Of a stretch of DNA of 64,000 nt, positions 6,813 through 64,000 are shown one piece after another. Positions within the stretch are counted from its first letter, which is position 1. Each line of letters starts with the position of its first letter. Below the pieces are notes generated by a model. It saw only the letters and a program-made list of their open reading frames with translations, did not search any database and was not told the DNA's origin. Source of the DNA: Lytechinus pictus (taxonomy: Eukaryota); NCBI RefSeq assembly GCF_037042905.1, contig NC_087251.1, forward strand, positions 12,772,001-12,836,000. The letters run 5' to 3'. The translations under genes were made by a program, and so were the position numbers.

Positions 6813-7403
6813 ATATCGTCGGCGGTCATCCGAGCCGTCGTATCCGCATAGGACGGTGAAAACCCATTTCAGAGAAAATCGACTTCAAAGTTTACTATAA
6901 TTTTCACACTTAGTTCTTGAGCCTTACAACATATTCATTGCTAGAAAAATACATGGTTGGAAAGACCAAGACAATTGCTTGACAATGGTATCCTTATTTT
7001 CACACAAAACCAAGGATTATAGAAAATATCGCAAAAGAGCTCCGTGCTTGTAATCTCAGTTTGAGCGGTTTAGATTTCCCCTGTACAAAAACGCCATAGG
7101 GAATACAACAACCCTGAGCGCGATTTCAATGCGCGCAGTCAGTCAAAACGTTGTATCGCTTTTCACATGCAAAGTCAATGGAGTGCAGATGGCCGATACG
7201 ACAGTTTGGTTGACCGCGCAAATTGAAATCGCAGTCAGTCAAAATGTTGTATCGCTCTGCTACAGTACACGTTTCCAATGGGATTTGCGCATTTTATTAA
7301 AAAGTTGTCTGGCATCGCCATGAAAATCCCCTCATATGATCTCAGAAACTAAAATAAATTGCTGCCTACAAAAATTAAGTTATGAATAAAATAGGACTTG
7401 TAC
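6813..7403 (+). mobile_element. 3'-truncated copy of the TA-flanked MITE at 17001-17737
   Basis: Colinear, high similarity to 17003-17590, starting with the same left TIR (atatcgtcggcggtcatccg); right TIR absent. Confidence 0.85.
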
Positions 7404-46546: not shown

Positions 46547-46636
46547 ATGGAATTAAACCATCAAAATGAATTCCAAGTGCTGAAGGAGGAGAATTCTCGA
46601 CTGAGGCTACAACTTGAAAAATATGAATTGGAATCG
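46547..46636 (+). CDS. MOCS3: MOCS3 exon 1 (MELNHQNEFQVLKEENSRLRLQLEKYELES)
   Basis: ATG, coiled-coil-like peptide resembling Uba4/MOCS3 N-termini, phase-0 GTAAA donor compatible with exon 2. Confidence 0.7.
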
Positions 46637-51670: not shown

Positions 51671-53330
51671 ATATGATTATTATTTAGATGCAGGGTTTCA
51701 GAGGTGCATATATTTTTTGACGTCTTGCGAGGTTGTTTCAAAGAGACAAAATATTAAAACTGATTTCTAACGTATGCCTATGTTGGACGAAATGAATATT
51801 TTGCTCCGCCCACAATCATCGTCATCTGTATGGGAGGGTAGGTAGTCCTGTAGATCTGCGGTCATAAACACTTGATGCATAATAAGAAGTCTAACAAGAA
51901 CAGTGCAAGCGTGGATGTCGAGACAATTTCAAAATGTTTGCTTCACCTTGACCAAAAAGAATCTAATCTGTTTTTAAATGAGTTGATGCTGGAGGACATA
52001 CAGGCAAACTATTCCAAGATTGGATCACTCTTTTACTGAAAAATCTGCTGCGGGTGTTCAACCGACAGTGAGTCATGAAAAGTTTGAAGGGATGACCTCT
52101 TGTTCCCTGGTACTGGGACCTCATGAAGAGGGATTCTGGGTCGACTCTGTCTATACCATGCAATATTTCAAATACTTGTATCATGTCCCCTTGTTCTCTG
52201 CGGTAATGTAAGGAGTACAGATTCAGTTTAACAAGATATACTGTAAGGAGCTAAATCCTGGAAATAGTCTTGTTGCTCTACTTTGAACAGATTCAATCCT
52301 TTTATCATCAGTGATGAATCTAGGACTCCACACAACACTACAATACTTCCAAGTGTGGTCGAACAAGAGCCTTGTAAAGAGGCAGAAATATATCCGGTTT
52401 AATGTTCACAAATGCACGTTTGATGATGCCCAACATTGGTTAGCTTTCTGGATAGATGCAGATACATGTTGATGAAATGTGAGTTCACTATCAAGAGGAA
52501 CACCAAGATCCCTTTCACAGTTGACATCAACCAGTGAATGATTCTCCATAGAGTATGAAGGATGCATATTGTTATTTCCTATATGAGGAGTCTTACATTT
52601 ATCAGAGGCAGCTGCCATGAGAGTGACCATTTCTCAATGCCATTCAAATCGTCTTGCAGTGATTGACTACAGTCAGAGTTTCGTACTCTGGCATAAATCT
52701 TAGCGTTGTCAGTATAAAATAGTGTAGAGCTTGAAGTAACGTCTGCAGATCATTTACATACATAACAAAGAGGGTTGGCCAGAGCACACTACCCTGCAGT
52801 ATGCCACTAAGTACTTGTGTCCAATCTGATTTAAGATCGTCAAAAACAATACACTGTACACGATGAGAAAGGAAGGCCTTGACCCATGTTAAAAAGCGGA
52901 TCACGTATTCCAAACGATTCATTTTTTCTTATAATTCTGGTGTGTGGAACAGAGTCAAAGGCTTTTCTGAAGTCCAAGTATATCACGTCAACAGGATCAC
53001 CACAATCAATACTTTTGGTCCGATCTTCAAGCTGGCAAATCAATTGTGTTGTACATGAACGGCCAGGTACAAATCCATGTTGAGCTTCACAAAATAGCTG
53101 CTGAATAACTCCTGTGCTTGACAAAGTCATCTCTCAGAATGGATTCCACAACTTTCACCACCACAGACATGAGACTAATGGGCCGGTGGTTACTAGCATC
53201 CTTCCTGCTACCTTTCTTGAAGATAGCAGTATATATTCCAAGTGCAAATTTAGAAGATTTTTCAAATATATCTCAAGAGCCAAAAAGATAAGTCCGACAT
53301 CCACACACGCATGCATCCAGACTCTTCAAT
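51671..53330 (-). mobile_element. Degraded CR1-clade LINE fragment (RT pseudogene)
   Basis: Frameshifted ORFs with QHGFVPGRSCTTQL, DVIYLDFRKAFDSVPH, SGILQGSVLWPTLF, ERDLGV and TRGHPFKL. Confidence 0.9.
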
Positions 53331-53801: not shown

Positions 53802-55611
53802 CCCTAAACATCCTGCCTGAGTTTCAAGTCTCATGACCAAGGTCAAAGGTCATTTAGGGTCAATGAACTTTGGCCAGGTTGGGAATATTTGTTGAATTAC
53901 CATCATAACTTTATGATTTTATGGATCTGATTATAAAACTTGGACATAAGAGTAATCAAGTATCACTGAACATCCTGTGCGAGTTTCAGGTCACATGTCC
54001 AAGGTCATTTAAGGTCAATGAACTTTGGCCATTTTGGGGTATTTGTTGAATTACCATCATAACTCTGAAATTGTATTGGTCTAGTTCTTAAAACTTGGAC
54101 ATAAGTGTAATAAAGTATCACTGAACATCCTGTGCAAGTTTCAGGTCACATGACCAAGGTCAAACTTTGGCCATGTTGGGGGTAATTATTAAGTTGCTGT
54201 CACAACTTTCAAAGTTTATAGATATAGTTTATGAATTATGGACATCAAGTATCACTAACAAGTCTTAGATCACATGATCAAGGTCAAATGTCATTTATGG
54301 TCAATGAATGTCGTATTGTGTCTTTATATGAATGGTGTTTTTTGTGAATAATTATTTGATAGTAGTTTTTAAAGTCAGCACTGCTGCTATATTGAATCAT
54401 GTAATGCAGGTGAGACTGCCAGAGGCAATCTCTTGGCGAATCTAGGAGCCTCCGGCTAATCTAGTCCTAGATCTACATCCATTCCCAATTGTGATATTCG
54501 GAAAAGCGGTGGGTGTATTATTTTATTATTACCAGGCCTAGACCCTATTAACCTTGAAATGTAATTGAGAGACGTGCTCTGACATTTGCAACCAATTACT
54601 GGTGGCAACAATTGTCTGGTTGAATTTTTTGTTACGATAAACCAGCAGTGAATCCTAGTCATATAAACAACAAAAACTGTAAACACAAGACCAAAGGCAA
54701 AGTGAATTGTCAGTGGCTGCTTTGCTGCTAATTGCAGCCTCTCTGCAAGTGTGCATAGTCTTCTGCATCAGACGTATTGCTCACATTTTTTTTACAAGCA
54801 TCAGACTTGTAAAGGCAAAGACAAAAGCTGCTGTATTAATATAAATTCAGTCTTTATTGACACTACAGTGAAGACAAAGTCTAAGTCTAACTGTTAAATG
54901 ATGACATCAAGATTGAAGTTGAAATAGAGCTGTCCCTGATATCCATTAACTTGTGGCCGAGTTTTAGCTGATTGAGCTCAATTTAGTTCTCTGAAAATAA
55001 GCAAAATTAACCTAAAGATTTTGACATTTTTATGATTTGAACTTGCTATGAAAGTTAATTAGTCTTCAAGGAACTGACCATGAAGTGTAAAATGCAGGTC
55101 TTGAGAACTAGTATTGGAAGTAGTGGCAGTGATCAGGCAGAGACCTCGAGACAGAGGCATTGTGGCATCCAACCATACAGATTTTGCTCACAGCGCAATG
55201 AGAATAGGATGCAGAAAAAGTATCTAATTGAAAAAGGGGGCATTGTCGCCAATGTATGTGAGTGCCCCTATAGTTTGTGCTTGTATCAAGTACTTTTTTG
55301 ACAACATTTACCGTCTGTTCTGGGTAATCATTTTATCAATACTGATAGTTTTCATTATTTCCCATTACGGTACTGTAAAATGGCTGGTCCAGCGCTAACA
55401 GTAACCATACACAATGATAGATCGCAAAAGTGGAAGCCAATGCCTGATTTTGGTAGTAGAATTATGCATGCTTTTTAATACCAGACAGATTGCATACACA
55501 AAAAATGAATGATTTACAAAAGGGTCTTGCTATGAAAAAATAGATTAATTTGTAGCAATTGAACATTGTATTTGTTATTTTGGGTTTGTAAATGTTGTTT
55601 TTATTATCTAG

Positions 55612-55744
55612 ATGAAAGCTAAGACAGAGCATGATTCAAGCAATGGCATGTTGGCTGAAAAGAGTTCAAACGTCTCCAATCTGGATAATGCTAGCATCAA
55701 GAGATACAGCAGACAACTCATACTACCAGAACTAGGAGTCAAAG
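55612..55744 (+). CDS. MOCS3: MOCS3 exon 2 (...SIKRYSRQLILPELGVK)
   Basis: AG/GT boundaries; RYSRQ motif; 133 nt. Confidence 0.92.
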
Positions 55745-56605
55745 GTTAGATATCTAAAAATCTTTTGAAACAACATCAGCTATATGAAAACAGAAAAAAA
55801 AATCAGAACAAGTTGGATGTTATTGTAAGATTTGTAACACAAAGCAGATATTCCAGCTTGTACAGTGTATATACCAATTTCAGTGGCAGGTCCAGGCAAA
55901 TGCACAAGGGACACATACAGCATTTATATTTTGAGAATCATCCTTTGAACATCCATTTGATGTAGCTAAATCTTTATCATCTGCACCCCCTATATTTAAA
56001 AATATAATGTAATGCAATTGCTATCAAGAGGCAAGAGGACAATGAAATGACTAGCTACATAAAATTTCATTACCATTTTAGAAAGAATGTTATTGCTGTG
56101 AAAACTGAAATTTCAAACCTGTTAAAAACCAGCAGATATGTAGGAAGAAAAAGTTGTCCTGTACATGAAGAAGTAATCCCAAAGCCCTTTTTGTTTTGTC
56201 CAAATTATTTTCATCTAATAAAGTTCACATTTTTTTTCTAGTAACCTTCATGGTTTATTAAGCAGATTCTCAATAATTTTTTATTCCCATCAGCTAAAGT
56301 TTATAGATTAAACTTTTTTTTTTTCACAAGCATATGAATTGAAAATTCAAAATTTTTGCAAGTTTGATCAGGATTGACAGAAAATGCACTCACATTGTGT
56401 TAAATCAGAAAAAGTGTGGATTTCTCATTAGCATAAGAAAGGGTCACCGTTCGTGCTAGCCAATACTGGAATTCATGTCTTCCTCTCTCAAATACATAAT
56501 GGATTTTTATTTGTGAAAATTTATAATTTTACATTTTTTTGTATGAATTTCACAGAGATGTACACAGTCTTTTACTCATTTTATATTTTTCTATTCAACC
56601 TCCAG

Positions 56606-56698
56606 GTCAGCTGCAGATTGCTAATTCTTCAGCATTGATCATTGGTGCTGGTGGTCTTGGATGCCCAGCTGCTGTCTATCTTGCTGCTGCTGGTATTG
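56606..56698 (+). CDS. MOCS3: MOCS3 exon 3 ([31 protein letters not shown])
   Basis: GxGxxG nucleotide-binding loop; AG/GT; 93 nt. Confidence 0.95.
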
Positions 56699-56903
56699 GT
56701 ATGTATCAGTCAAGTCATGTAAAATAAGGTTTGAATGATGAAAACAAGTTCCTTGATATTTTTCCCCTCATTTTTCTTTCTTCTTCAAACATTTGACTAT
56801 CAGTCTTGTTTGGAATGGTCTCGGTTACAATTAAAGTTATGGTATGAATGATATTCATTAATTATTAGTATCATTGAATACTGAATTGACTTTTAAATTC
56901 CAG

Positions 56904-57024
56904 GTCGACTCGGAGTTGTGGACTACGATGATGTAGAACTGAGTAACCTTCACAGACAGATCCTCCATACAGAGCAGAGAGTAGGATGGTCCAAGTCAGA
57001 ATCTATCAAGTCTAGTGTTAAAAA
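56904..57024 (+). CDS. MOCS3: MOCS3 exon 4 ([22 protein letters not shown]...)
   Basis: SNLHRQ motif; AG/GT; 121 nt. Confidence 0.95.
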
Positions 57025-57067
57025 GTAGGTGTAAAGATCACTTTGTAGACACTAGTAAGGTGTGTTG

Positions 57068-57159
57068 CAGTGTTGTATTCAAGGCCCAAACCCTCAAGGC
57101 CAAGGCATGGTAAAAATAAGCCGGAGGCCAAGGCCGAGTATCAAGGCACTACACCACTG
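57068..57159. mobile_element. 92-bp hAT-type mini-MITE in MOCS3 intron 4
   Basis: cagtgttgta / tacaccactg termini; perfect 8-bp TSD GTGTGTTG; internal aaggcc repeats. Confidence 0.85.
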
Positions 57160-57609
57160 GTGTGTTGGTCTCTGGACTGGATAGTTCCAATCTGCAATGA
57201 TGTACTTTGGTAAGGAAGGAAGGGTGGTCTCTCAAATATTACAAGGTACGTCTGAAAGGTGTGTCTGAAATCTTTTGAATCACTCTGTAAAGGGAATGAG
57301 GTCTAGTATTTTGTTCTTTGAATTAAACCAGATACTACAGGTTTCAGATCCCTGCCACATTACCATTATCATCAGTTAGATGAGTGGATTGGTCCTATTC
57401 AGACTTTATAACAATATGTCAGAAGGGATGTTAGAAAAATGGCTCTGAAATCCATTTTCCGTACCAGATTTTCTTGTTGATCTTGGGTGCAAGTTTAATC
57501 ACAGCTAGCTTGTAGGATTAACATTACTTTTTGTATTTCTAACTGCCCCAAATAAGAATATAGGAAGTGAGAAATGATTGAACATCATTTTTATTCTTAA
57601 TATCCCCAG

Positions 57610-57684
57610 CCTCAATTCATCGGTGCAATGTCAAGCCTACCAAGTGCAGCTAGACAGAAACAATGCTATGGACATCATCAGACA
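57610..57684 (+). CDS. MOCS3: MOCS3 exon 5 (NLNSSVQCQAYQVQLDRNNAMDIIRQ)
   Basis: LNS motif; 75 nt; ends at a U12 AT donor. Confidence 0.92.
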
Positions 57685-58419
57685 ATATCCTTTTCATGAG
57701 ACACCCCAGAGCTTGTTCAGACATACTGTACCTTAAAGCTCACCAACAACACTCTGTACCATTCATTATACTAAGTCACAGTAAAAATAAATGTTACGGG
57801 GGAAAACTAGACCAAAGTATTGAAAAGCTTACTGCCAAATACCATGTCACAAGTTTTAGGACCCATCCCCCCCAAATAAATTTTAAGAAAATATCTTTTT
57901 GACAAGTGGTGATGCATGTTTATTGAAATTATTCAAGTTTTTTTTATAAAGTCCAAACACTATAATATTACAGAAGTTTTTGTTTAGCTTTGTTACACTG
58001 TGTCTCGAACAAAGATGAATAAGATGAATAGAAATATTCTATTGCAAATGTGTGCCATACAAAAATTATGTAATGTTTTCAAAGTGTAATTAAATTGTAA
58101 ACACTTAGAAGATAAAGCTAATCTCACAGTAATTACTGTTATACCAATAATATAATGTAAAGAATGAGGTTTTAAGTGACAAATTCCTTCAATATTTTTA
58201 TAGTATACAAATATGCCAGGGTATTTTGGAGAAAGTATAGTGACAGATTATTCAGCAGAGGTAGAGCTGTGCATGCTCATTGCAAATATTGATAATGCCT
58301 TTTGAAATATAATGAAAATTTATCTTTTATCACATGAGCACCGTTTCATAGAAAGGATACTATATATAGTAAGTAATGGCAATGAGAAGATTATTATTCC
58401 TTGACTGTCTTTGTTACAC
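57685..58419 (+). other. U12-type AT-AC intron (MOCS3 intron 5)
   Basis: 5'ss ATATCCTTT; branch site TTCCTTGAC at 58397-58405; terminal AC at 58418-58419; splicing restores [14 protein letters not shown]. Confidence 0.93.
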
Positions 58420-58537
58420 ATATGATATGGTATTGGACTGTACAGACAATGTTGCTACAAGGTATCTACTGAATGATGCATGTGTGCTGTCAGGGAAGCC
58501 ATTGATCTCCGGAAGTGCTCTCAGGTTTGAGGGACAG
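58420..58537 (+). CDS. MOCS3: MOCS3 exon 6 ([39 protein letters not shown])
   Basis: Highly conserved MoeB-family segment; GTAAG donor; 118 nt. Confidence 0.95.
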
Positions 58538-58721
58538 GTAAGCTTTAAAAGGAAGAGATACTTTAACTTTCTTGGAAGGTGGATTGTATTTTTGTTGACA
58601 CTAGGTTTTTGATTAAAGTTCTGGAAATACCTGTAATTTATAACAATACATCTTGTCCAGATTAATTAGCTGTCTCGGCATTCAAAATTGGTGGATTGTT
58701 GCAGACATTATTAGCCAAGGA

Positions 58722-59186
58722 CAGGGTTGGGCTCAATTATAAGGTAATTGATCAATTACGTAATTAATTACATTTTTTGAGTAAATTTAATTGTAATTGT
58801 ATTTGAAAAAAAATGTAATTCACTTCAATTATTGCCAATTACTTTTAATTAAATTCAATTACTTTTACACTGTACAATAAACTTACTTAATTTATGATGG
58901 AATTTCATGACCTTTTTCATGTCAACTGCTGCAGCATCAAAGAGTGTAACAAAAAACAGAATCCGTGCTCTTTAACATAAACCTTCATCTTGTCAGTTTC
59001 TCTGTAACTTAGAATTATGTTGAAATAGGTGGTACTAACGTTAGTACATTTATACAAGATACAAATTAATTTCATTTATTACTTTTGTAGAAAGTAATTG
59101 AAATTTTAATTGTAATTGAATTAAAGTAATTGGTAATTGTAATTGAAAAAAAAAGTAGTTTAATCGAAAAGTAATTGTAATTGTAC
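58722..59186. mobile_element. hAT-like MITE relic with AATTAC/GTAATT subterminal repeats
   Basis: Starts cagggttggg; many aattac/gtaatt hexamers; right TIR not seen. Confidence 0.55.
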
Positions 59187-59456
59187 ATTATTGTACATCA
59201 TTTTTAGATCATGAATTTAGTGATAGAAATTATAGGAGAAAGAGGAAGGGGAAGGGGAAACGAAGAAAAAGAACCACTTGCAATTTCAATTTTTCTTCTT
59301 GTTTACAATACAAAGTGGTTGCAATACAAAGTATTGCAAATATAAAGCACTATGAAGGAATGTTCCTTGTAAAAGTAATTCCATTATGGGTTAAATTTCC
59401 CATGATTGCTGACAAGTATCTGACTTTAATGATGATTGTCTCTTTCCCCTTTCCAG

Positions 59457-59565
59457 CTCACTGTATATAACCATGAAGGGGGTCCATGTTACCGTTGTTT
59501 GTACCCCAAACCTCCCCCAGCGGAGACGGTCACCAACTGCTCTGAAGGTGGTGTATTAGGAGTAG
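59457..59565 (+). CDS. MOCS3: MOCS3 exon 7 ([36 protein letters not shown])
   Basis: First Zn-binding CxxC and conserved active-site-loop Cys; AG/GTGAGT; 109 nt. Confidence 0.95.
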
Positions 59566-60021
59566 GTGAGTTATAACCCCCTCCTCTTCTGTTTTCTCAA
59601 AATGTCAATTTACATTGATGAACTCTTGTATATTAAATTTTTGCATATTTTGAAGCTTAACATGGATTGACATGAACTTGGTCTGGATGGAACCAACAAC
59701 CAAAAAATTAATAAGATAAAAGTAAAAAATAGAGAGGGGAAATTGTTCGAAGATTTGATGACACATTATTGCCAAATTATGACTTTTTATTCCATTACCC
59801 TTGACAAATGGAGTAAATAGTACATGACTTAAAATATACAATCAGCAAGGAGATTTGTGACTTAGGCAATGTTAAGGCACCATTGAGTCAACCTTATATT
59901 TACCCCTTAGAATTGGTAATGTAATATATAATTCAGAAGGTAAATTGTATTTCATTGTGAAATTCGTAGAGGAATGAAAATCAATATTACATTATTTCTT
60001 TCTTCCCTTTATTCATTTCAG

Positions 60022-60084
60022 TTCCTGGAATCATTGGTTGTATACAAGCATTAGAAGCCATTAAATTGGCTGCTGATATTGGCA
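60022..60084 (+). CDS. MOCS3: MOCS3 exon 8 (VPGIIGCIQALEAIKLAADIG)
   Basis: QALEAIK motif; 63 nt; ends at a U12 GT donor. Confidence 0.93.
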
Positions 60085-60502
60085 GTATCCTTTTCCAATG
60101 AACTTGGTTAAGCCATTGGGTACTTTAACCAAATGAGAATTTCAGAATTCAGTCTTCAACTTGTTTACATATTCTCTTGTGGGTCAGAGACTCAGGAGAA
60201 ATCTGGGTACCTGAACACTGTCTCCAGAGACCAAAAAGGCAGTGTAAGTCAAGAAATGAATTTTTGAAAATCAAAACGATGCTCTTTGAAATCAACTATG
60301 ATTAAATTTGTTTTGATTTATAGAAAAAAGGAGGAAAAGAGTTATTGTTGAATTTGTTTTTTAGGATGATAAAAGAAATTTCAGAAGTGATGATATTCAA
60401 TGTCATGCAGAGACAGGTAAGGAGAGTTAATCATTGCGAGAGGGAAACACTTTCTCATATATATTGCATGGTAAAATCATGTTCCTTGACTGAATTCACC
60501 AG
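60085..60502 (+). other. U12-type GT-AG intron (MOCS3 intron 8)
   Basis: 5'ss GTATCCTTT; branch site TTCCTTGAC at 60482-60490; CAG ending at 60502 with no polypyrimidine tract. Confidence 0.93.
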
Positions 60503-60666
60503 CGTCATACTCTCAGAAGCTATTGGTATTTGATGGTTTAGATGGTACATACAGGACTATCAAACTAAGACCTAAAAAACCAACATGTGTTTTGTGTGGT
60601 GACAATCCATCGGTGACACAGCTCATCGACTATGAAGAATTCTGTGGTGCCAGCGCAACCGATAAG
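60503..60666 (+). CDS. MOCS3: MOCS3 exon 9 (TSYSQKLLVFDG...CVLCGDNPSVTQLIDYEEFCGASATDK)
   Basis: Second CxxC and DYExFCG motif; 164 nt; AAG|GT donor. Confidence 0.95.
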
Positions 60667-61150
60667 GTATTCGATTAGATTTGTTCAGCATTCATTGTAA
60701 GAGCTTTTAGTCTAGGAGATTGGGGGCTTTATTCAGAATTTTTGGTGGGGAAGGTTTGACAAGCTTATCCGGGGTAAAATTGTGCGCTGATTCCAAAAAT
60801 GTCACTCTTATTGACCGTACTCACGCCATTTTGGCCATTTTGGCAAATTTTTGACCAAAAATGACAATTTTGACCACTCTTTGAAAAATTGTCCCTAAAC
60901 AGAATGCTTTTGTAGCCACATGCAATCAGAAGGGTCTGTCTTAAGTAAAAATGCACCCAGATTCCAGATAAAGTGGTTTCATTTGCCAAATCACAAGAGA
61001 AGTGGTCATGACAATTTTCATGATTTTTTTGTCCGTAATGTGTTACAAATATTTATCAGAGCTACGACTGGATGTTTTTAGAAATCCACATTTATTTTCA
61101 AAATATGCGCTGGATCATAACCATCAACCCCATGTAATTTATTCTGTCAG

Positions 61151-62740
61151 TTTTGACCTATGAGGGTCATTTTGGGTACTTTAGACATAACTGAACATTC
61201 GCGCAGTTTGCATTACTAACTGTTCAAATAGGCAGGAAATTGAGGACTTCAGCGTGTTTTATCTTCTTCCCTTATATAATGAGAATGCATTTAAATGTCT
61301 TTCTGGTGTAGAATTTTATGCTGATTCCAAATATATCAGTCATAATAACCCTATTTAATAGCTTGTGGTCATTTTGACCACTTATGGCCCTTAAAATGGC
61401 CAATGACATCAGTTCATTTTACCCCCAAATACTTTGAACGTTACCAGAACCATTACAAGGTGTGCTGCGACACCTAATATTGGTGTGTTAATCCTTTAAA
61501 TTGAACATCTCACAAAGTGTTTTGACCTTTTGTAATTTATTCCATCAGTTTTGAGTTTTGACCTATGAGGGCCATTGGGGGTACTTTATACATAACTGAC
61601 CATTCACGCAGTTATGCATAATAAAGTGCACATATACATGTAGGCAGGAATTTGAGGACTTATAGCGTGTTTTATCTTCTTCCCATATAAAATGCAAATG
61701 CGTACAACAATCCATCTTGTGTAGAATTTTATGCTGATTCCAAATATATGAGTCTTAATGACACTATTCAATAGCTTATGGTTATTTTGGCCACTTATGG
61801 TCCTTAAAATGACCAATGACATCGTTCATTTTACCCCCAAATACTTCGAACGTTACCAGAATCGTTACAAGGGTGTGTTGCGACACCTAACATTGGTGTG
61901 TGTTAATCCTTTTGAACATCTCAAAATTATTTTGACCTCATGTAATTTATTCCATCAGTTTTGAACTATGAGGGTCATTTGGGGTACTTTAGACATAACT
62001 GACCATTCACGCAGTTTTGCATATAATAAACTGCACATAGGCAGGAATTTGAGATCTTCAGCGTGTTTTATCTCCTTCCCTTATAAAATGGGAATGCATT
62101 GAAAGGTCCAATTTGTATAGAATATTATGCTGATTCTAAATATATCAGTCTTAATGACCCTATTGAACACCTTATGGTCATTTTGGCCACTTATGGCCTT
62201 AAAAATGACCAATAACATCAGTTCAATTTATCCAAAAATACCTCAATGTTACCAGAATCGTTACCAGGGTGTGCTGTGACATCTAACATTGGTGTATTAA
62301 TCCTTTAAAATGAACATTTCAAAAGTATTTTGACCTCATGTAATTTATATCATTAGTTTTGACTTTTGACCTATGAGGGTCATTTTGGGTAACTGACAAT
62401 TCGTGCAATTTTGCATAATAAATGTGCTAATCGGCAGGAGTTTGAGGTCTTCAGTGTGCTTTATCTTCCTCCTTTATCAAATGGGAATGATGCATAGGTC
62501 GTTCTTGTGTAGAATTTCATGCTGATTCCCAATATGTCAGTCTTAATGACCCCATTTAACAGATTATGGTCATTTTGGCCACTTTTGGCCCCCCAAATGA
62601 CCAATACCATCTGTTCAATACTTCAATTTATCCAAAAATACTTTGAATGTTAATATAATCGTTACAAGGGTGTGCTGTGACACCTAACACTGGTATATTT
62701 ATCATTTAAATTGAGTGTCCCAAAAATATTTTGACCACCT
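61151..62740. repeat. Tandem array of ~4 units of ~405 bp in MOCS3 intron 9
   Basis: ttttgacctatgagggtcatt... recurs near 61151, 61557, 61959 and 62365; sub-motifs (tgctgattccaa, ggtcattttg) extend over about 60765-63900. Confidence 0.85.
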
Positions 62741-64000
62741 TGGTCATTTTGGCCACATTGTCCCTGCCCAATGTGTATACTAAATCAGCCTATAGTGAAC
62801 ATTGTTAGGAGACAATTCAGGATTGTGTTAATATTAGCATCAAATAATTGTTAAATGGGAAAAGTTTGAAAGTTTTTGGGTGAAAATCAATGCAATGATT
62901 CCATATAAACGAGTGTTATTGGCCGAACTATTGGACTTCGTGGTCATTTTGATCACTTTTCCTCAATAATTTCTAGTGACCACACATTATTTGATTTAAA
63001 AAGGGCTCAAATGTTGCTTAATATTATTTTCAGCGTGAGCTACTACACCAATAATCAAGAGTTTAATGAATGTGATAAAAACCTTTACATCAAGTATACA
63101 TAAGGTTGTTTTACCATTCACTTTGGTCATTTTCATGATTTAGGCACATTGACCATTTTGTAATTCATGGAAAGGAATTCAAGAATGAGATATTGTTAGC
63201 ATCATTTAATGTTAGATAGGATATATTACAAAAACTTTCTGAACCAGATTAATACAATGATTTCAAATATATCAGTCTTAATGACTACTAAGTGGTCATT
63301 TTGGTCACTTTTGGTCCCTACAATTAGCAATGACAATTACATGTATCAAAAGTATTCCAATGTTGTTGCTCTATATTTTTGTAAGATTTGTTGTATCAAT
63401 CATAATCAGTGACAAATTATTTAATTCAATATGATATTACTAATAGTACATAATCAAAATGTGACAATTTTGGCTACTTTGACCGTTTATCCAATGTGTG
63501 AATTTATAAACATGACTTAGCAGCAATTGTAGGTCTATGAACATGATGAAATGCGTTCAATCCCTTTTGATGGGAAATATCAAAGGCTCACCTTGAGTAA
63601 AAATTGTGCCAAATATCTTATGACTGTCTACTGTGGCCCCTTTGATCACTGTATGTTCCTAAATAGCCAGCATTGTTTTCCTTCTTTAAAGTCAAATTGT
63701 ACTGAGAATCATTGCAAAGCAAAATGGTTCACAAACATCACATTGGCATGATTGGTGAGCAGCAAATTTACCCTTAATTCTTTTGAAGACGTACTGGGTA
63801 ATAAAACAGATTCTCTATTTGAAATTATTCTCTGTGCCGATTTTCGGTCACTCTTTAACAATTTAGGGCAAGTTCTCCAATTTCAACTTTACCAATCATG
63901 CCAATGTGAGGTTTGTGGAACATTATACAAAATGAAAAAGGTAATAAATATGCATCATGGTCACATCTATTCGTGAAATTCACTTTGACCAATAGCTTTG

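What the first reader, a model, noticed from the sequence alone, without database searches (positions are those of the whole stretch)
57685..60502. MOCS3/UBA4 carries two minor-spliceosome introns of different subtypes (AT-AC and GT-AG)
Seen: intron 5 reads ATATCCTTT...TTCCTTGAC-14nt-AC-end, and intron 8 reads GTATCCTTT...TTCCTTGAC-12nt-AG-end. Both restore the conserved reading frame. Established: U12 introns are well under 1% of introns, genes with two or more are uncommon, and human MOCS3 is intronless. Inference: in this lineage the shared activator for Moco synthesis (MOCS2A) and Urm1-dependent tRNA thiolation depends twice on the minor spliceosome, a potentially rate-limiting control absent from the mammalian gene. 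Standard gene finders would probably mis-model exons 5 and 6.
Basis: partly seen in the sequence, partly recalled or inferred. Interest (0 to 1): 0.8.

Follow-up and report, generated by a model that had tools for sequence, protein, structure and literature searches.

The report
Sea-urchin MOCS3 has three minor introns

Summary
Confirmed and extended. The window comes from Lytechinus pictus. It holds exons 1-9 of the 12-exon MOCS3/UBA4 gene on the + strand.

- **The two introns.** Intron 5 (57685-58419, AT-AC) and intron 8 (60085-60502, GT-AG) both have a perfect U12-type 5' splice site (RTATCCTTT). Both carry the branch box TTCCTTGAC 12-14 nt before the 3' end.
- **RNA support.** Stranded RNA-seq reads and a transcript contig join exactly 57684^58420 and 60084^60503.
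- **Splicing machinery.** The genome encodes U11, U12, U4atac and U6atac.
- **A third intron.** Intron 10 (GTATCCTTT...ACCTTGAC, 14 nt from branch A to the AG) lies about 3 kb beyond the window end.
- **Conservation.** All three positions hold U12-type introns in another urchin, an acorn worm, a shark, a scallop and a coral. A starfish has a U2-type intron at one of them. A sponge and a chytrid fungus have U2-type introns at all three. A crab has lost these introns, and human MOCS3 is listed as an orphan retrogene.
- **What is already known.** RefSeq already models the gene exactly this way. Zebrafish mocs3 intron 5-6 is already typed U12 and is retained in zrsr2 knockouts.

The scan holds only this same first-stage note for the stretch, plus notes on two other AT-AC introns elsewhere in this genome.

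The "lineage-specific" and "mis-modelled" claims are not, and rate-limiting control remains untested here. Interest is moderate, because genes with three minor introns are rare.

The parts
46547..46636 (+). MOCS3 coding exon 1 (N-terminal coiled-coil part, aa 1-30)
   Evidence: tblastn of L. variegatus P0001; splice mapping; full model identical to XP_063958024.1
46637..55611 (+). Intron 1, U2-type GT-AG, 8975 nt; holds a reverse-transcriptase fragment on the minus strand (52840-53130)
55612..55744 (+). Exon 2
   Evidence: contig and reads join 55744^56606
56606..56698 (+). Exon 3 (GAGGLG nucleotide-binding loop of the ThiF domain)
56904..57024 (+). Exon 4
57610..57684 (+). Exon 5, ends ...AGACA
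57685..58419 (+). Intron 5 (position A, phase 2): U12-type, AT-AC subtype, 735 nt. 5' splice site ATATCCTTT at 57685-57693. Branch box TTCCTTGAC at 58397-58405, with the branch A 15 nt from the intron end.
   Evidence: Sequence. RNA joint 57684^58420 in 1 contig + 12 reads. U12-type at the same position in 6 other species.
58420..58537 (+). Exon 6
58538..59456 (+). Intron 6, U2-type GT-AG with a long pyrimidine tract; holds a foldback/MITE-like repeat at about 58700-59200
59457..59565 (+). Exon 7 (first CxxC zinc motif, GGPCYRC)
60022..60084 (+). Exon 8, ends ...TTGGCA
60085..60502 (+). Intron 8 (position B, phase 1): U12-type, GT-AG subtype, 418 nt. 5' splice site GTATCCTTT at 60085-60093. 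Branch box TTCCTTGAC at 60482-60490, with the branch A 13 nt from the intron end.
   Evidence: Sequence. RNA joint 60084^60503 in 1 contig + 3 reads, plus 6 reads carrying a synonymous SNP at 60504. U12-type in 5 other species, U2-type in starfish.
60503..60666 (+). Exon 9 (second CxxC motif, end of the ThiF domain)
60667..64000 (+). In-window part of intron 9 (U2-type, 6140 nt in all, ends at extrapolated 66806). Exons 10-12 (rhodanese domain) follow outside the window. The third U12-type intron, intron 10, is at extrapolated 66958-67666 (= L002:6958-7666 = G000:C7:12838958-12839666). It reads GTATCCTTTGCC...ACCTTGAC, with 14 nt from the branch A to the terminal AG.

Best explanation
The stretch is the middle of the Lytechinus pictus MOCS3/UBA4 gene. 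This gene encodes the ThiF-rhodanese enzyme that activates URM1 and MOCS2A.

Introns 5 and 8, and intron 10 just beyond the window, are genuine U12-type introns removed by the minor spliceosome (U11/U12 and U4atac/U6atac.U5). U11 and then U6atac pair with the rigid RTATCCTTT 5' splice site. U12 pairs with the TCCTTRAC branch box, which sits 13-15 nt from the 3' end in place of a pyrimidine tract.

The three introns are an inherited state. It dates at least to the common ancestor of cnidarians and bilaterians. Later changes include subtype switching at position A (AT-AC, AT-AA or GT-AG), U2-type introns at these positions in some lineages, and loss of these introns in a crab and in mammals.

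Shown: exact junctions in RNA for introns 5 and 8; the sequence signals; the presence of all four minor snRNA genes; positional and type conservation.

Inferred: actual dependence on the minor spliceosome in the urchin, and any rate-limiting effect on expression.
For: - Sequence signals. All three introns match TATCCTT 7/7 at +2..+8 and TCCTTRAY 7-8/8, with the branch A 13-15 nt from the 3' end. The eight other introns in the gene are ordinary GT-AG.
- Phases are 2, 1 and 1. From my own knowledge, U12-type introns tend to avoid phase 0.
- RNA joints.
- Minor snRNAs in the genome, all above the Rfam cut-off: U12 114.6 bits, U6atac 134.8, U11 112, U4atac 91.8.
- Predicted U6atac pairing with the 5' splice site is -6.5 to -8.7 kcal/mol for the three introns, against +0.8 to -2.4 for three control introns.
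- Orthologous positions are U12-type in S. purpuratus, Ptychodera, Heptranchias, Pecten and Porites. In Asterias two of the three are.
- The model is identical to RefSeq XP_063958024.1.
- Zebrafish mocs3 intron 5-6 is typed U12 and retained in zrsr2 knockouts (IRchange 0.39, p 6.7e-5). The mRNA falls, log2FC -1.37 (PMC9501576 supplement).
Against: - No perturbation of the minor spliceosome has been done in an urchin.
- Read support is thin, at 9-12 reads per junction.
It rests on three things: identity with the RefSeq model, a colinear transcript-derived ORF from another echinoid (P0003), and the sequence signals.
- No intronic reads were seen in introns 5 or 8 in rRNA-depleted libraries, so slow splicing is not evident at this depth.
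- ZRSR2 also acts on some U2-type introns, so the zebrafish result is suggestive rather than proof.
Confidence: 0.92

Rival explanations
1. The introns are removed by the major (U2-dependent) spliceosome despite their U12-like look. A U2-type AT-AC class exists, and GT-AG U12-like sites can be used by U1/U2.
For: Terminal dinucleotides do not define the intron type (PMC3584512). At the same three positions, a sponge and a chytrid have plain U2-type introns, and a starfish has one at position B, so these positions can be handled by the major spliceosome.
Against: [quoted passage not shown] These motifs have been kept in seven species spanning coral to shark, while the rest of each intron differs in length and sequence. 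The exon ends lack the U2-type -1 G, reading ACA, GCA and TCA. Pyrimidine runs before the acceptor are short. Zebrafish intron 5-6 is typed U12 and is retained when ZRSR2 is lost.
Confidence: 0.04
2. The pair or trio of minor introns is a lineage-specific, echinoid acquisition that adds a new control layer.
For: The human gene is intronless, so a comparison with human alone makes the urchin look special.
Against: The same three positions and phases hold U12-type introns in an acorn worm, shark, scallop and coral. All eleven intron positions of a chytrid fungus's gene coincide with animal intron positions.
Confidence: 0.02
3. The three U12-type introns are real but neutral relics with no regulatory meaning. 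They persist only because conversion or loss is slow.
For: A starfish carries a U2-type intron at position B, and a sponge and a chytrid carry U2-type introns at all three positions. A crab lacks these introns, and human MOCS3 is an intronless retrogene (PMC3548309). MOCS3 evidently still works in all of them. The title and abstract of the pan-eukaryotic survey say neutral processes may explain much of minor-intron evolution (PMC10639083, listed). No retention was seen in urchin RNA.
Against: All three are retained together in most sampled lineages from coral to shark. Multi-U12 genes are more frequent than a random model predicts (PMC1557818). Zebrafish mocs3 mRNA falls when minor splicing is impaired.
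Confidence: 0.6

Closest known systems
Zebrafish mocs3 intron 5-6 (typed U12 in the IAOD database; retained in zrsr2 knockout embryos, PMC9501576 Suppl. Table S4)
   Same: Orthologous gene and the same intron number as the urchin AT-AC intron. It is typed U12 and comes with experimental retention and lower mRNA when a minor-spliceosome factor is lost.
   Different: Only one mocs3 intron is listed there, and it is 101 nt against 735 nt here. The zebrafish locus could not be fetched, so positional identity and the state of positions B and C in zebrafish were not checked.
Human and mouse SLC9 (Na+/H+ exchanger) genes with three U12-type introns (Sheth et al. 2006, PMC1557818)
   Same: A single gene with three minor introns. 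That survey found two such genes in human and three in mouse.
   Different: An unrelated protein family of membrane transporters. MOCS3 is a cytosolic sulfur-relay enzyme. U12-type introns are described as almost absent from biosynthetic-pathway genes (PMC3584512).
[quoted passage not shown]
   Same: The review names this superfamily as the commonest case of two or three U12-type introns in one gene. From my own knowledge, not checked here, these genes include cases with AT-AC and GT-AG subtypes side by side, conserved across animals.
   Different: A different gene family. In MOCS3 the subtype at position A switches between lineages: AT-AC in echinoderms and coral, AT-AA in shark, GT-AG in acorn worm and scallop.
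Human MOCS3, an intronless 'orphan retrogene' (PMC3548309)
   Same: The same enzyme, with ThiF and rhodanese domains.
   Different: It has no introns at all. The intron-bearing parent gene, which by inference carried the three U12-type introns, has been lost, so the mammalian gene is independent of the minor spliceosome.

Membership tests
U12-type (minor-spliceosome) introns | Rigid 5' splice site [A/G]TATCCTT starting at intron position +1 | tested here: met
   ATATCCTTT at 57685, GTATCCTTT at 60085, and GTATCCTTT at L002:6958. Each matches 7/7 at +2..+8.
U12-type (minor-spliceosome) introns | Branch box TCCTTRAY close to the 3' splice site (about 10-20 nt), in place of a long pyrimidine tract | tested here: met
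   TCCTTGAC 8/8 with the branch A 15 nt and 13 nt from the intron end in introns 5 and 8; ACCTTGAC 7/8 at 14 nt in intron 10. The longest pyrimidine run in the last 20 nt is 4-6, against 10-16 in U2-type introns 6, 7 and 11 but only 3-7 in introns 1-4 and 9, so this measure separates the classes only partly.
U12-type (minor-spliceosome) introns | AT-AC or GT-AG termini actually used in RNA | tested here: met
   Joints 57684^58420 (AT..AC) and 60084^60503 (GT..AG) appear in a contig and in stranded reads.
U12-type (minor-spliceosome) introns | The host genome encodes the minor-spliceosome snRNAs | tested here: met
   U12, U6atac, U11 and U4atac are all found above the Rfam gathering scores in G000. 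The recognition sequences are present: AAGGAA in U12, AAGGAGAGA in U6atac, and AAAAAGGGC at the 5' end of U11.
U12-type (minor-spliceosome) introns | Orthologous introns at the same position are also U12-type | tested here: met
   Alignment columns 203 (phase 2), 300 (phase 1) and 409 (phase 1). Positions A and C are U12-type in all 7 echinoderm, acorn-worm, shark, scallop and coral genes, with a weak branch box in the shark at C. Position B is U12-type in 6 of those 7.
U12-type (minor-spliceosome) introns | Excision depends on U11/U12/U4atac/U6atac | not testable with these tools
   Only indirect evidence: zebrafish mocs3 intron 5-6 is retained in zrsr2 knockouts (PMC9501576).
MOCS3/UBA4 adenylyltransferase-sulfurtransferase | N-terminal ThiF/E1-like adenylation domain with a GxGxxG loop and two CxxC zinc motifs | tested here: met
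   PF00899, E 6.1e-84, residues 32-266 of the partial model. GAGGLG, CYRC and CVLC are visible in the translation.
MOCS3/UBA4 adenylyltransferase-sulfurtransferase | C-terminal rhodanese domain with an active-site cysteine loop | tested here: met
   Exons 10-12 were found by tblastn. The CRRGNDS loop is present in the full translation. The near-identical protein P0001, representative of the same 90%-identity cluster, carries PF00581. The model is identical to a RefSeq 'MOCS3-like' protein.
MOCS3/UBA4 adenylyltransferase-sulfurtransferase | Orthology (best hits are MOCS3 across animals) | tested here: met
   The named hits among the top 120 are annotated MOCS3/UBA4-type (adenylyltransferase/sulfurtransferase); some are unnamed or 'hypothetical protein'. 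Identity is 62-97%.

The most novel reading that the evidence does not exclude
MOCS3 may be one of very few genes that has kept three minor-spliceosome introns since before cnidarians and bilaterians split. If so, in most non-mammalian animals the single E1-like enzyme feeding both URM1-dependent tRNA wobble thiolation and molybdenum-cofactor synthesis would be a conserved, selected target of minor-spliceosome activity. Three slow splicing steps in series would make its mRNA output unusually sensitive to minor-spliceosome levels. Mammals and some arthropods would have escaped this coupling by retroposition or intron loss.
Probability: 0.2. Interest if true: 0.6.

Novelty: new member of a known kind. 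Interest (0 to 1): 0.4.

Why it matters
U12-type introns are a well-understood class, and RefSeq already models these junctions, so nothing here is new in kind. What the work adds is a clean, checkable case.

- **Rarity.** A housekeeping sulfur-relay enzyme carries three minor introns at positions kept from coral to shark. Only two human genes were found with three U12-type introns (PMC1557818). U12-type introns are described as almost absent from biosynthetic-pathway genes (PMC3584512).
- **Evolutionary fates in one gene.** MOCS3 shows all the known outcomes for minor introns: subtype switching (AT-AC, AT-AA, GT-AG), U2-type introns at the same positions in other lineages, and intron loss (near-total in a crab, complete in the mammalian retrogene).
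- **A testable question.** It gives a natural system for asking whether several minor introns in series make a gene's output sensitive to minor-spliceosome dose. Two of the readouts are easy to measure: tRNA mcm5s2U and Moco-enzyme activity.
- **Experimental access.** Sea-urchin embryos allow morpholino knock-down of U12 or U6atac.

Tried and rejected
- **Literature.** Full-text searches for MOCS3, CNX5, AT5G55130 or 'molybdenum cofactor' together with U12 or minor intron found nothing. The only mention was in a zebrafish supplement.
- **Plant orthologue.** This was the test of whether the three introns predate opisthokonts, and it could not be done. AT5G55130/CNX5 is absent from the held supplements of two Arabidopsis U12 papers. 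Two other sources had no held text.
- **Failed locus look-ups.** Amphioxus (P0026), Acropora (P0102) and lizard (P0098) were not on record.
- **Other zebrafish papers.** Two further minor-splicing papers gave nothing on mocs3.
- **Raw motif counts.** These are not significant by themselves. The argument rests on exact placement.
- **Other RTATCCTT sites in the window.** Sites at 6988, 13800, 17178 and 29402 on the + strand, and at 58360, 42089 and 2085 on the - strand, had no credible partner branch box and acceptor. I rejected them as further U12-type introns.
- **U12 and U11 duplex energies.** These did not separate U12-type from control introns, because pyrimidine tracts also pair with the purine-rich U12 segment. 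Only U6atac pairing did.
- **Cross-species RNA.** The run from organism B (X11) put no reads on the exons at 92% or more likeness, so it gave no cross-species support.
- **First splice mapper.** The tblastn-based mapper missed short exons. I replaced it with an exact-match chainer (then 31).
Full report
**What is in the window.** The + strand from 46547 to the window end holds exons 1-9 of a 12-exon gene. Exons 10-12 lie 2.8-4.4 kb beyond the end; they were fetched as L002, which equals window 60001-70000. The spliced product is 455 aa. Its in-window part matches Pfam ThiF at E 6e-84. The top 120 hits of a protein search are MOCS3/UBA4 orthologues from across animals, plus a few chytrid fungi, wherever they carry an informative name. 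The best is Lytechinus variegatus at 97% identity. My model is identical, residue for residue, to RefSeq XP_063958024.1 of Lytechinus pictus. That protein sits on a contig of 49,738,939 nt, the same length as G000:C7. The organism is therefore L. pictus, and the public annotation already uses every junction described below.

**Checking the observation.** Intron 5 spans 57685-58419. It begins ATATCCTTTT, carries TTCCTTGAC at 58397-58405, and ends in AC 14 nt later. Intron 8 spans 60085-60502. It begins GTATCCTTTT, carries TTCCTTGAC at 60482-60490, and ends in AG 12 nt later. Both restore the frame.

By themselves the motif counts in the window are unremarkable: RTATCCTTT occurs 5 times against 2.15 expected, and TTCCTTGAC twice against 0.62. 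The placement is the point. The only two copies of the branch box in 64 kb sit 12-14 nt before the acceptors of exactly the two introns that start with the U12 donor motif. Each of those donors lies at the first base after a frame-preserving exon end.

**RNA evidence.** I laid one transcript-contig run and two stranded rRNA-depleted RNA-seq runs of the same species label on 55400-61200.
- All eight in-window junctions after exon 2 were recovered. The signal comes from first-mate-minus reads, which means + strand RNA in the usual stranded libraries.
- Junction 57684^58420 (AT..AC) is in the 1517-nt contig and in 4 + 8 reads.
- Junction 60084^60503 (GT..AG) is in the contig and in 3 reads.
- The tool reports 5 + 1 further reads as 60084^60505 with 'CA' between. 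This is the same joint carrying a synonymous G>A at 60504 (ACG to ACA). S. purpuratus has ACA at that codon.
- No alternative joints were reported at either intron.
- No reads fell inside either intron, so retention is not detectable at this low depth.
- The AT-AC joint can slide by 4 nt because ATAT occurs on both sides. Only the AT-AC reading corresponds to a known intron class.

**A third minor intron.** Mapping the full protein onto window plus L002 shows that intron 10 is also U12-type. It lies at L002:6958-7666, or extrapolated window 66958-67666. It begins GTATCCTTTGCC and carries ACCTTGAC, with the branch A 14 nt from the terminal AG. It sits in phase 1 inside the rhodanese domain. Its junction is supported in two ways: identity with the RefSeq model, and a transcript-derived ORF from another echinoid (P0003, from a 1687-nt contig) that is colinear across all three junctions.

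**Are they U12-type?**
- All three introns match TATCCTT 7/7 at +2..+8 and TCCTTRAY 7-8/8, with the branch A 13-15 nt from the 3' end. The eight other introns in the gene have ordinary GTRAGT-like or degenerate GT donors.
- The upstream exons end in ACA, GCA and TCA. Six of the eight U2-type donors follow a -1 G instead.
- The phases are 2, 1 and 1. From my own knowledge, U12-type introns tend to avoid phase 0.
- The genome encodes U12 (114.6 bits), U6atac (134.8), U11 (112) and U4atac (91.8), all above the Rfam cut-offs. Their recognition segments are intact.
- Predicted pairing of the urchin's own U6atac with the three donors is -6.5 to -8.7 kcal/mol, against +0.8 to -2.4 for three control donors. 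U12 and U11 duplex energies did not discriminate.

**Conservation.** I fetched the genomic loci of nine orthologues and mapped their exons exactly (mapping; aligned table). The three positions are alignment column 203 phase 2 (A), column 300 phase 1 (B) and column 409 phase 1 (C).

| Species | A | B | C |
|---|---|---|---|
| L. pictus (window) | U12, AT-AC | U12, GT-AG | U12, GT-AG |
| S. purpuratus (urchin) | U12, AT-AC | U12 | U12 |
| Asterias (starfish) | U12, AT-AC | U2 (GTTTGG) | U12 |
| Ptychodera (acorn worm) | U12, GT-AG | U12 | U12 |
| Heptranchias (shark) | U12, AT-AA, 72 nt | U12 (GTATCTTTT donor, TCCTTAAC box) | U12-type donor, weak branch box |
| Pecten (scallop) | U12, GT-AG | U12 | U12 |
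| Porites (coral) | U12, AT-AC | U12 | U12 |
| Oscarella (sponge) | U2, 48-56 nt | U2 | U2 |
| Spizellomyces (chytrid) | U2 | U2 | U2 |

- The positions shared by most species outside A, B and C hold U2-type introns in every species. One shark intron at column 371 (GTAAGC donor) was flagged 'U12?' by my crude score, and I judge that a false flag.
- All eleven of the chytrid's intron positions coincide with animal intron positions.
- The crab Portunus keeps a single N-terminal intron.
- Human MOCS3 is listed among orphan retrogenes (PMC3548309).

The three U12-type introns are therefore at least as old as the cnidarian-bilaterian ancestor. The intron positions themselves go back to the opisthokont ancestor. 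The review says U2-to-U12 conversion is unlikely (PMC3584512), so U12-to-U2 conversion in the sponge, chytrid and starfish is the more likely direction. That point is inference.

**What is already known.**
- A zebrafish study typed introns with the IAOD database. It lists mocs3 'Intron 5-6, 101 nt, U12' as significantly more retained in zrsr2 knockout embryos (IRchange 0.39, p 6.7e-5).
- The same study lists mocs3 among the down-regulated genes (log2FC -1.37, padj 1.2e-5) (PMC9501576, Suppl. Tables S3/S4).
- No paper in the searchable library discusses U12-type introns of MOCS3, UBA4 or CNX5 in its text.
- U12-type introns are described as almost absent from biosynthetic-pathway genes.

**Mechanism and its status.**
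- Shown: the junctions, the signals, the machinery genes and the conservation.
- Inferred from established knowledge of the minor spliceosome (PMC3584512): U11/U12 di-snRNP recognises the donor and branch box together, U4atac/U6atac.U5 completes the spliceosome, and removal tends to be slower than for U2-type introns. Three such introns in series could make MOCS3 output sensitive to minor-spliceosome activity.
- For that idea: the zebrafish data.
- Against any strong requirement: a sponge, a chytrid and a starfish have U2-type introns at these positions, and a crab and mammals lack these introns, yet the enzyme evidently persists in all of them.
- My estimates: about 0.92 that the three are genuine U12-dependent introns, and about 0.2 that their retention reflects selected regulatory coupling rather than slow neutral decay.

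**Verdict.** It is wrong about lineage specificity and gene-model failure, and it is untested on rate limitation. The finding is a new, well-documented member of a known kind, and its interest is moderate.

Noticed in passing
L002:6958-7666 (extrapolated window 66958-67666; G000:C7:12838958-12839666): A third U12-type (GT-AG) intron in the same gene, outside the window, within the rhodanese domain. It is conserved as U12-type from coral to shark.
   Followed up: yes
window 58700-59200 (inside intron 6): An AT-rich foldback or MITE-like repeat, with 31-nt inverted arms at 58831-58861 and 59107-59137. In RNA contigs and reads of both species labels it is 50-100 times deeper than the exons. It appears on both strands, with many loose ends and strand-switch joints. 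These are clearly reads from other genomic copies.
   Followed up: partly
window 61127-62694 (inside intron 9): A tandem array of a 396-nt unit, 3.9 copies, 80% matches.
   Followed up: partly
window 52840-53130, minus strand (inside intron 1): A 96-aa ORF matching reverse transcriptase RVT_1 (E 7.6e-8). It is a retrotransposon fragment antisense to MOCS3.
   Followed up: partly
window 57060-57160 (inside intron 4): A short dispersed repeat covered by RNA reads of all four runs. The reads show fixed differences (T57139C, C57154A) and loose ends on both sides, so they come from other copies and are not retention of intron 4.
   Followed up: no
window 60504: A synonymous G/A polymorphism at a CpG, in the first codon after the intron 8 junction (ACG/ACA, Thr). 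A is seen in 5 of 5 junction reads in run X8 and 1 of 4 in X9.
   Followed up: partly
L018 (Spizellomyces punctatus) against the animal loci: All 11 intron positions of the chytrid MOCS3 gene coincide in column and phase with animal intron positions. This is unusually complete conservation of gene structure across opisthokonts.
   Followed up: partly
L019 (Portunus trituberculatus): The crab orthologue has lost every intron except one near the N-terminus. This parallels the intronless mammalian retrogene and looks independent of it.
   Followed up: no
L006:13325-13396 (Heptranchias perlo): The shark intron at position A is only 72 nt. By the U12 donor register it has AT-AA termini, a rare non-canonical U12 subtype. 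The joint is ambiguous by a few nt.
   Followed up: no
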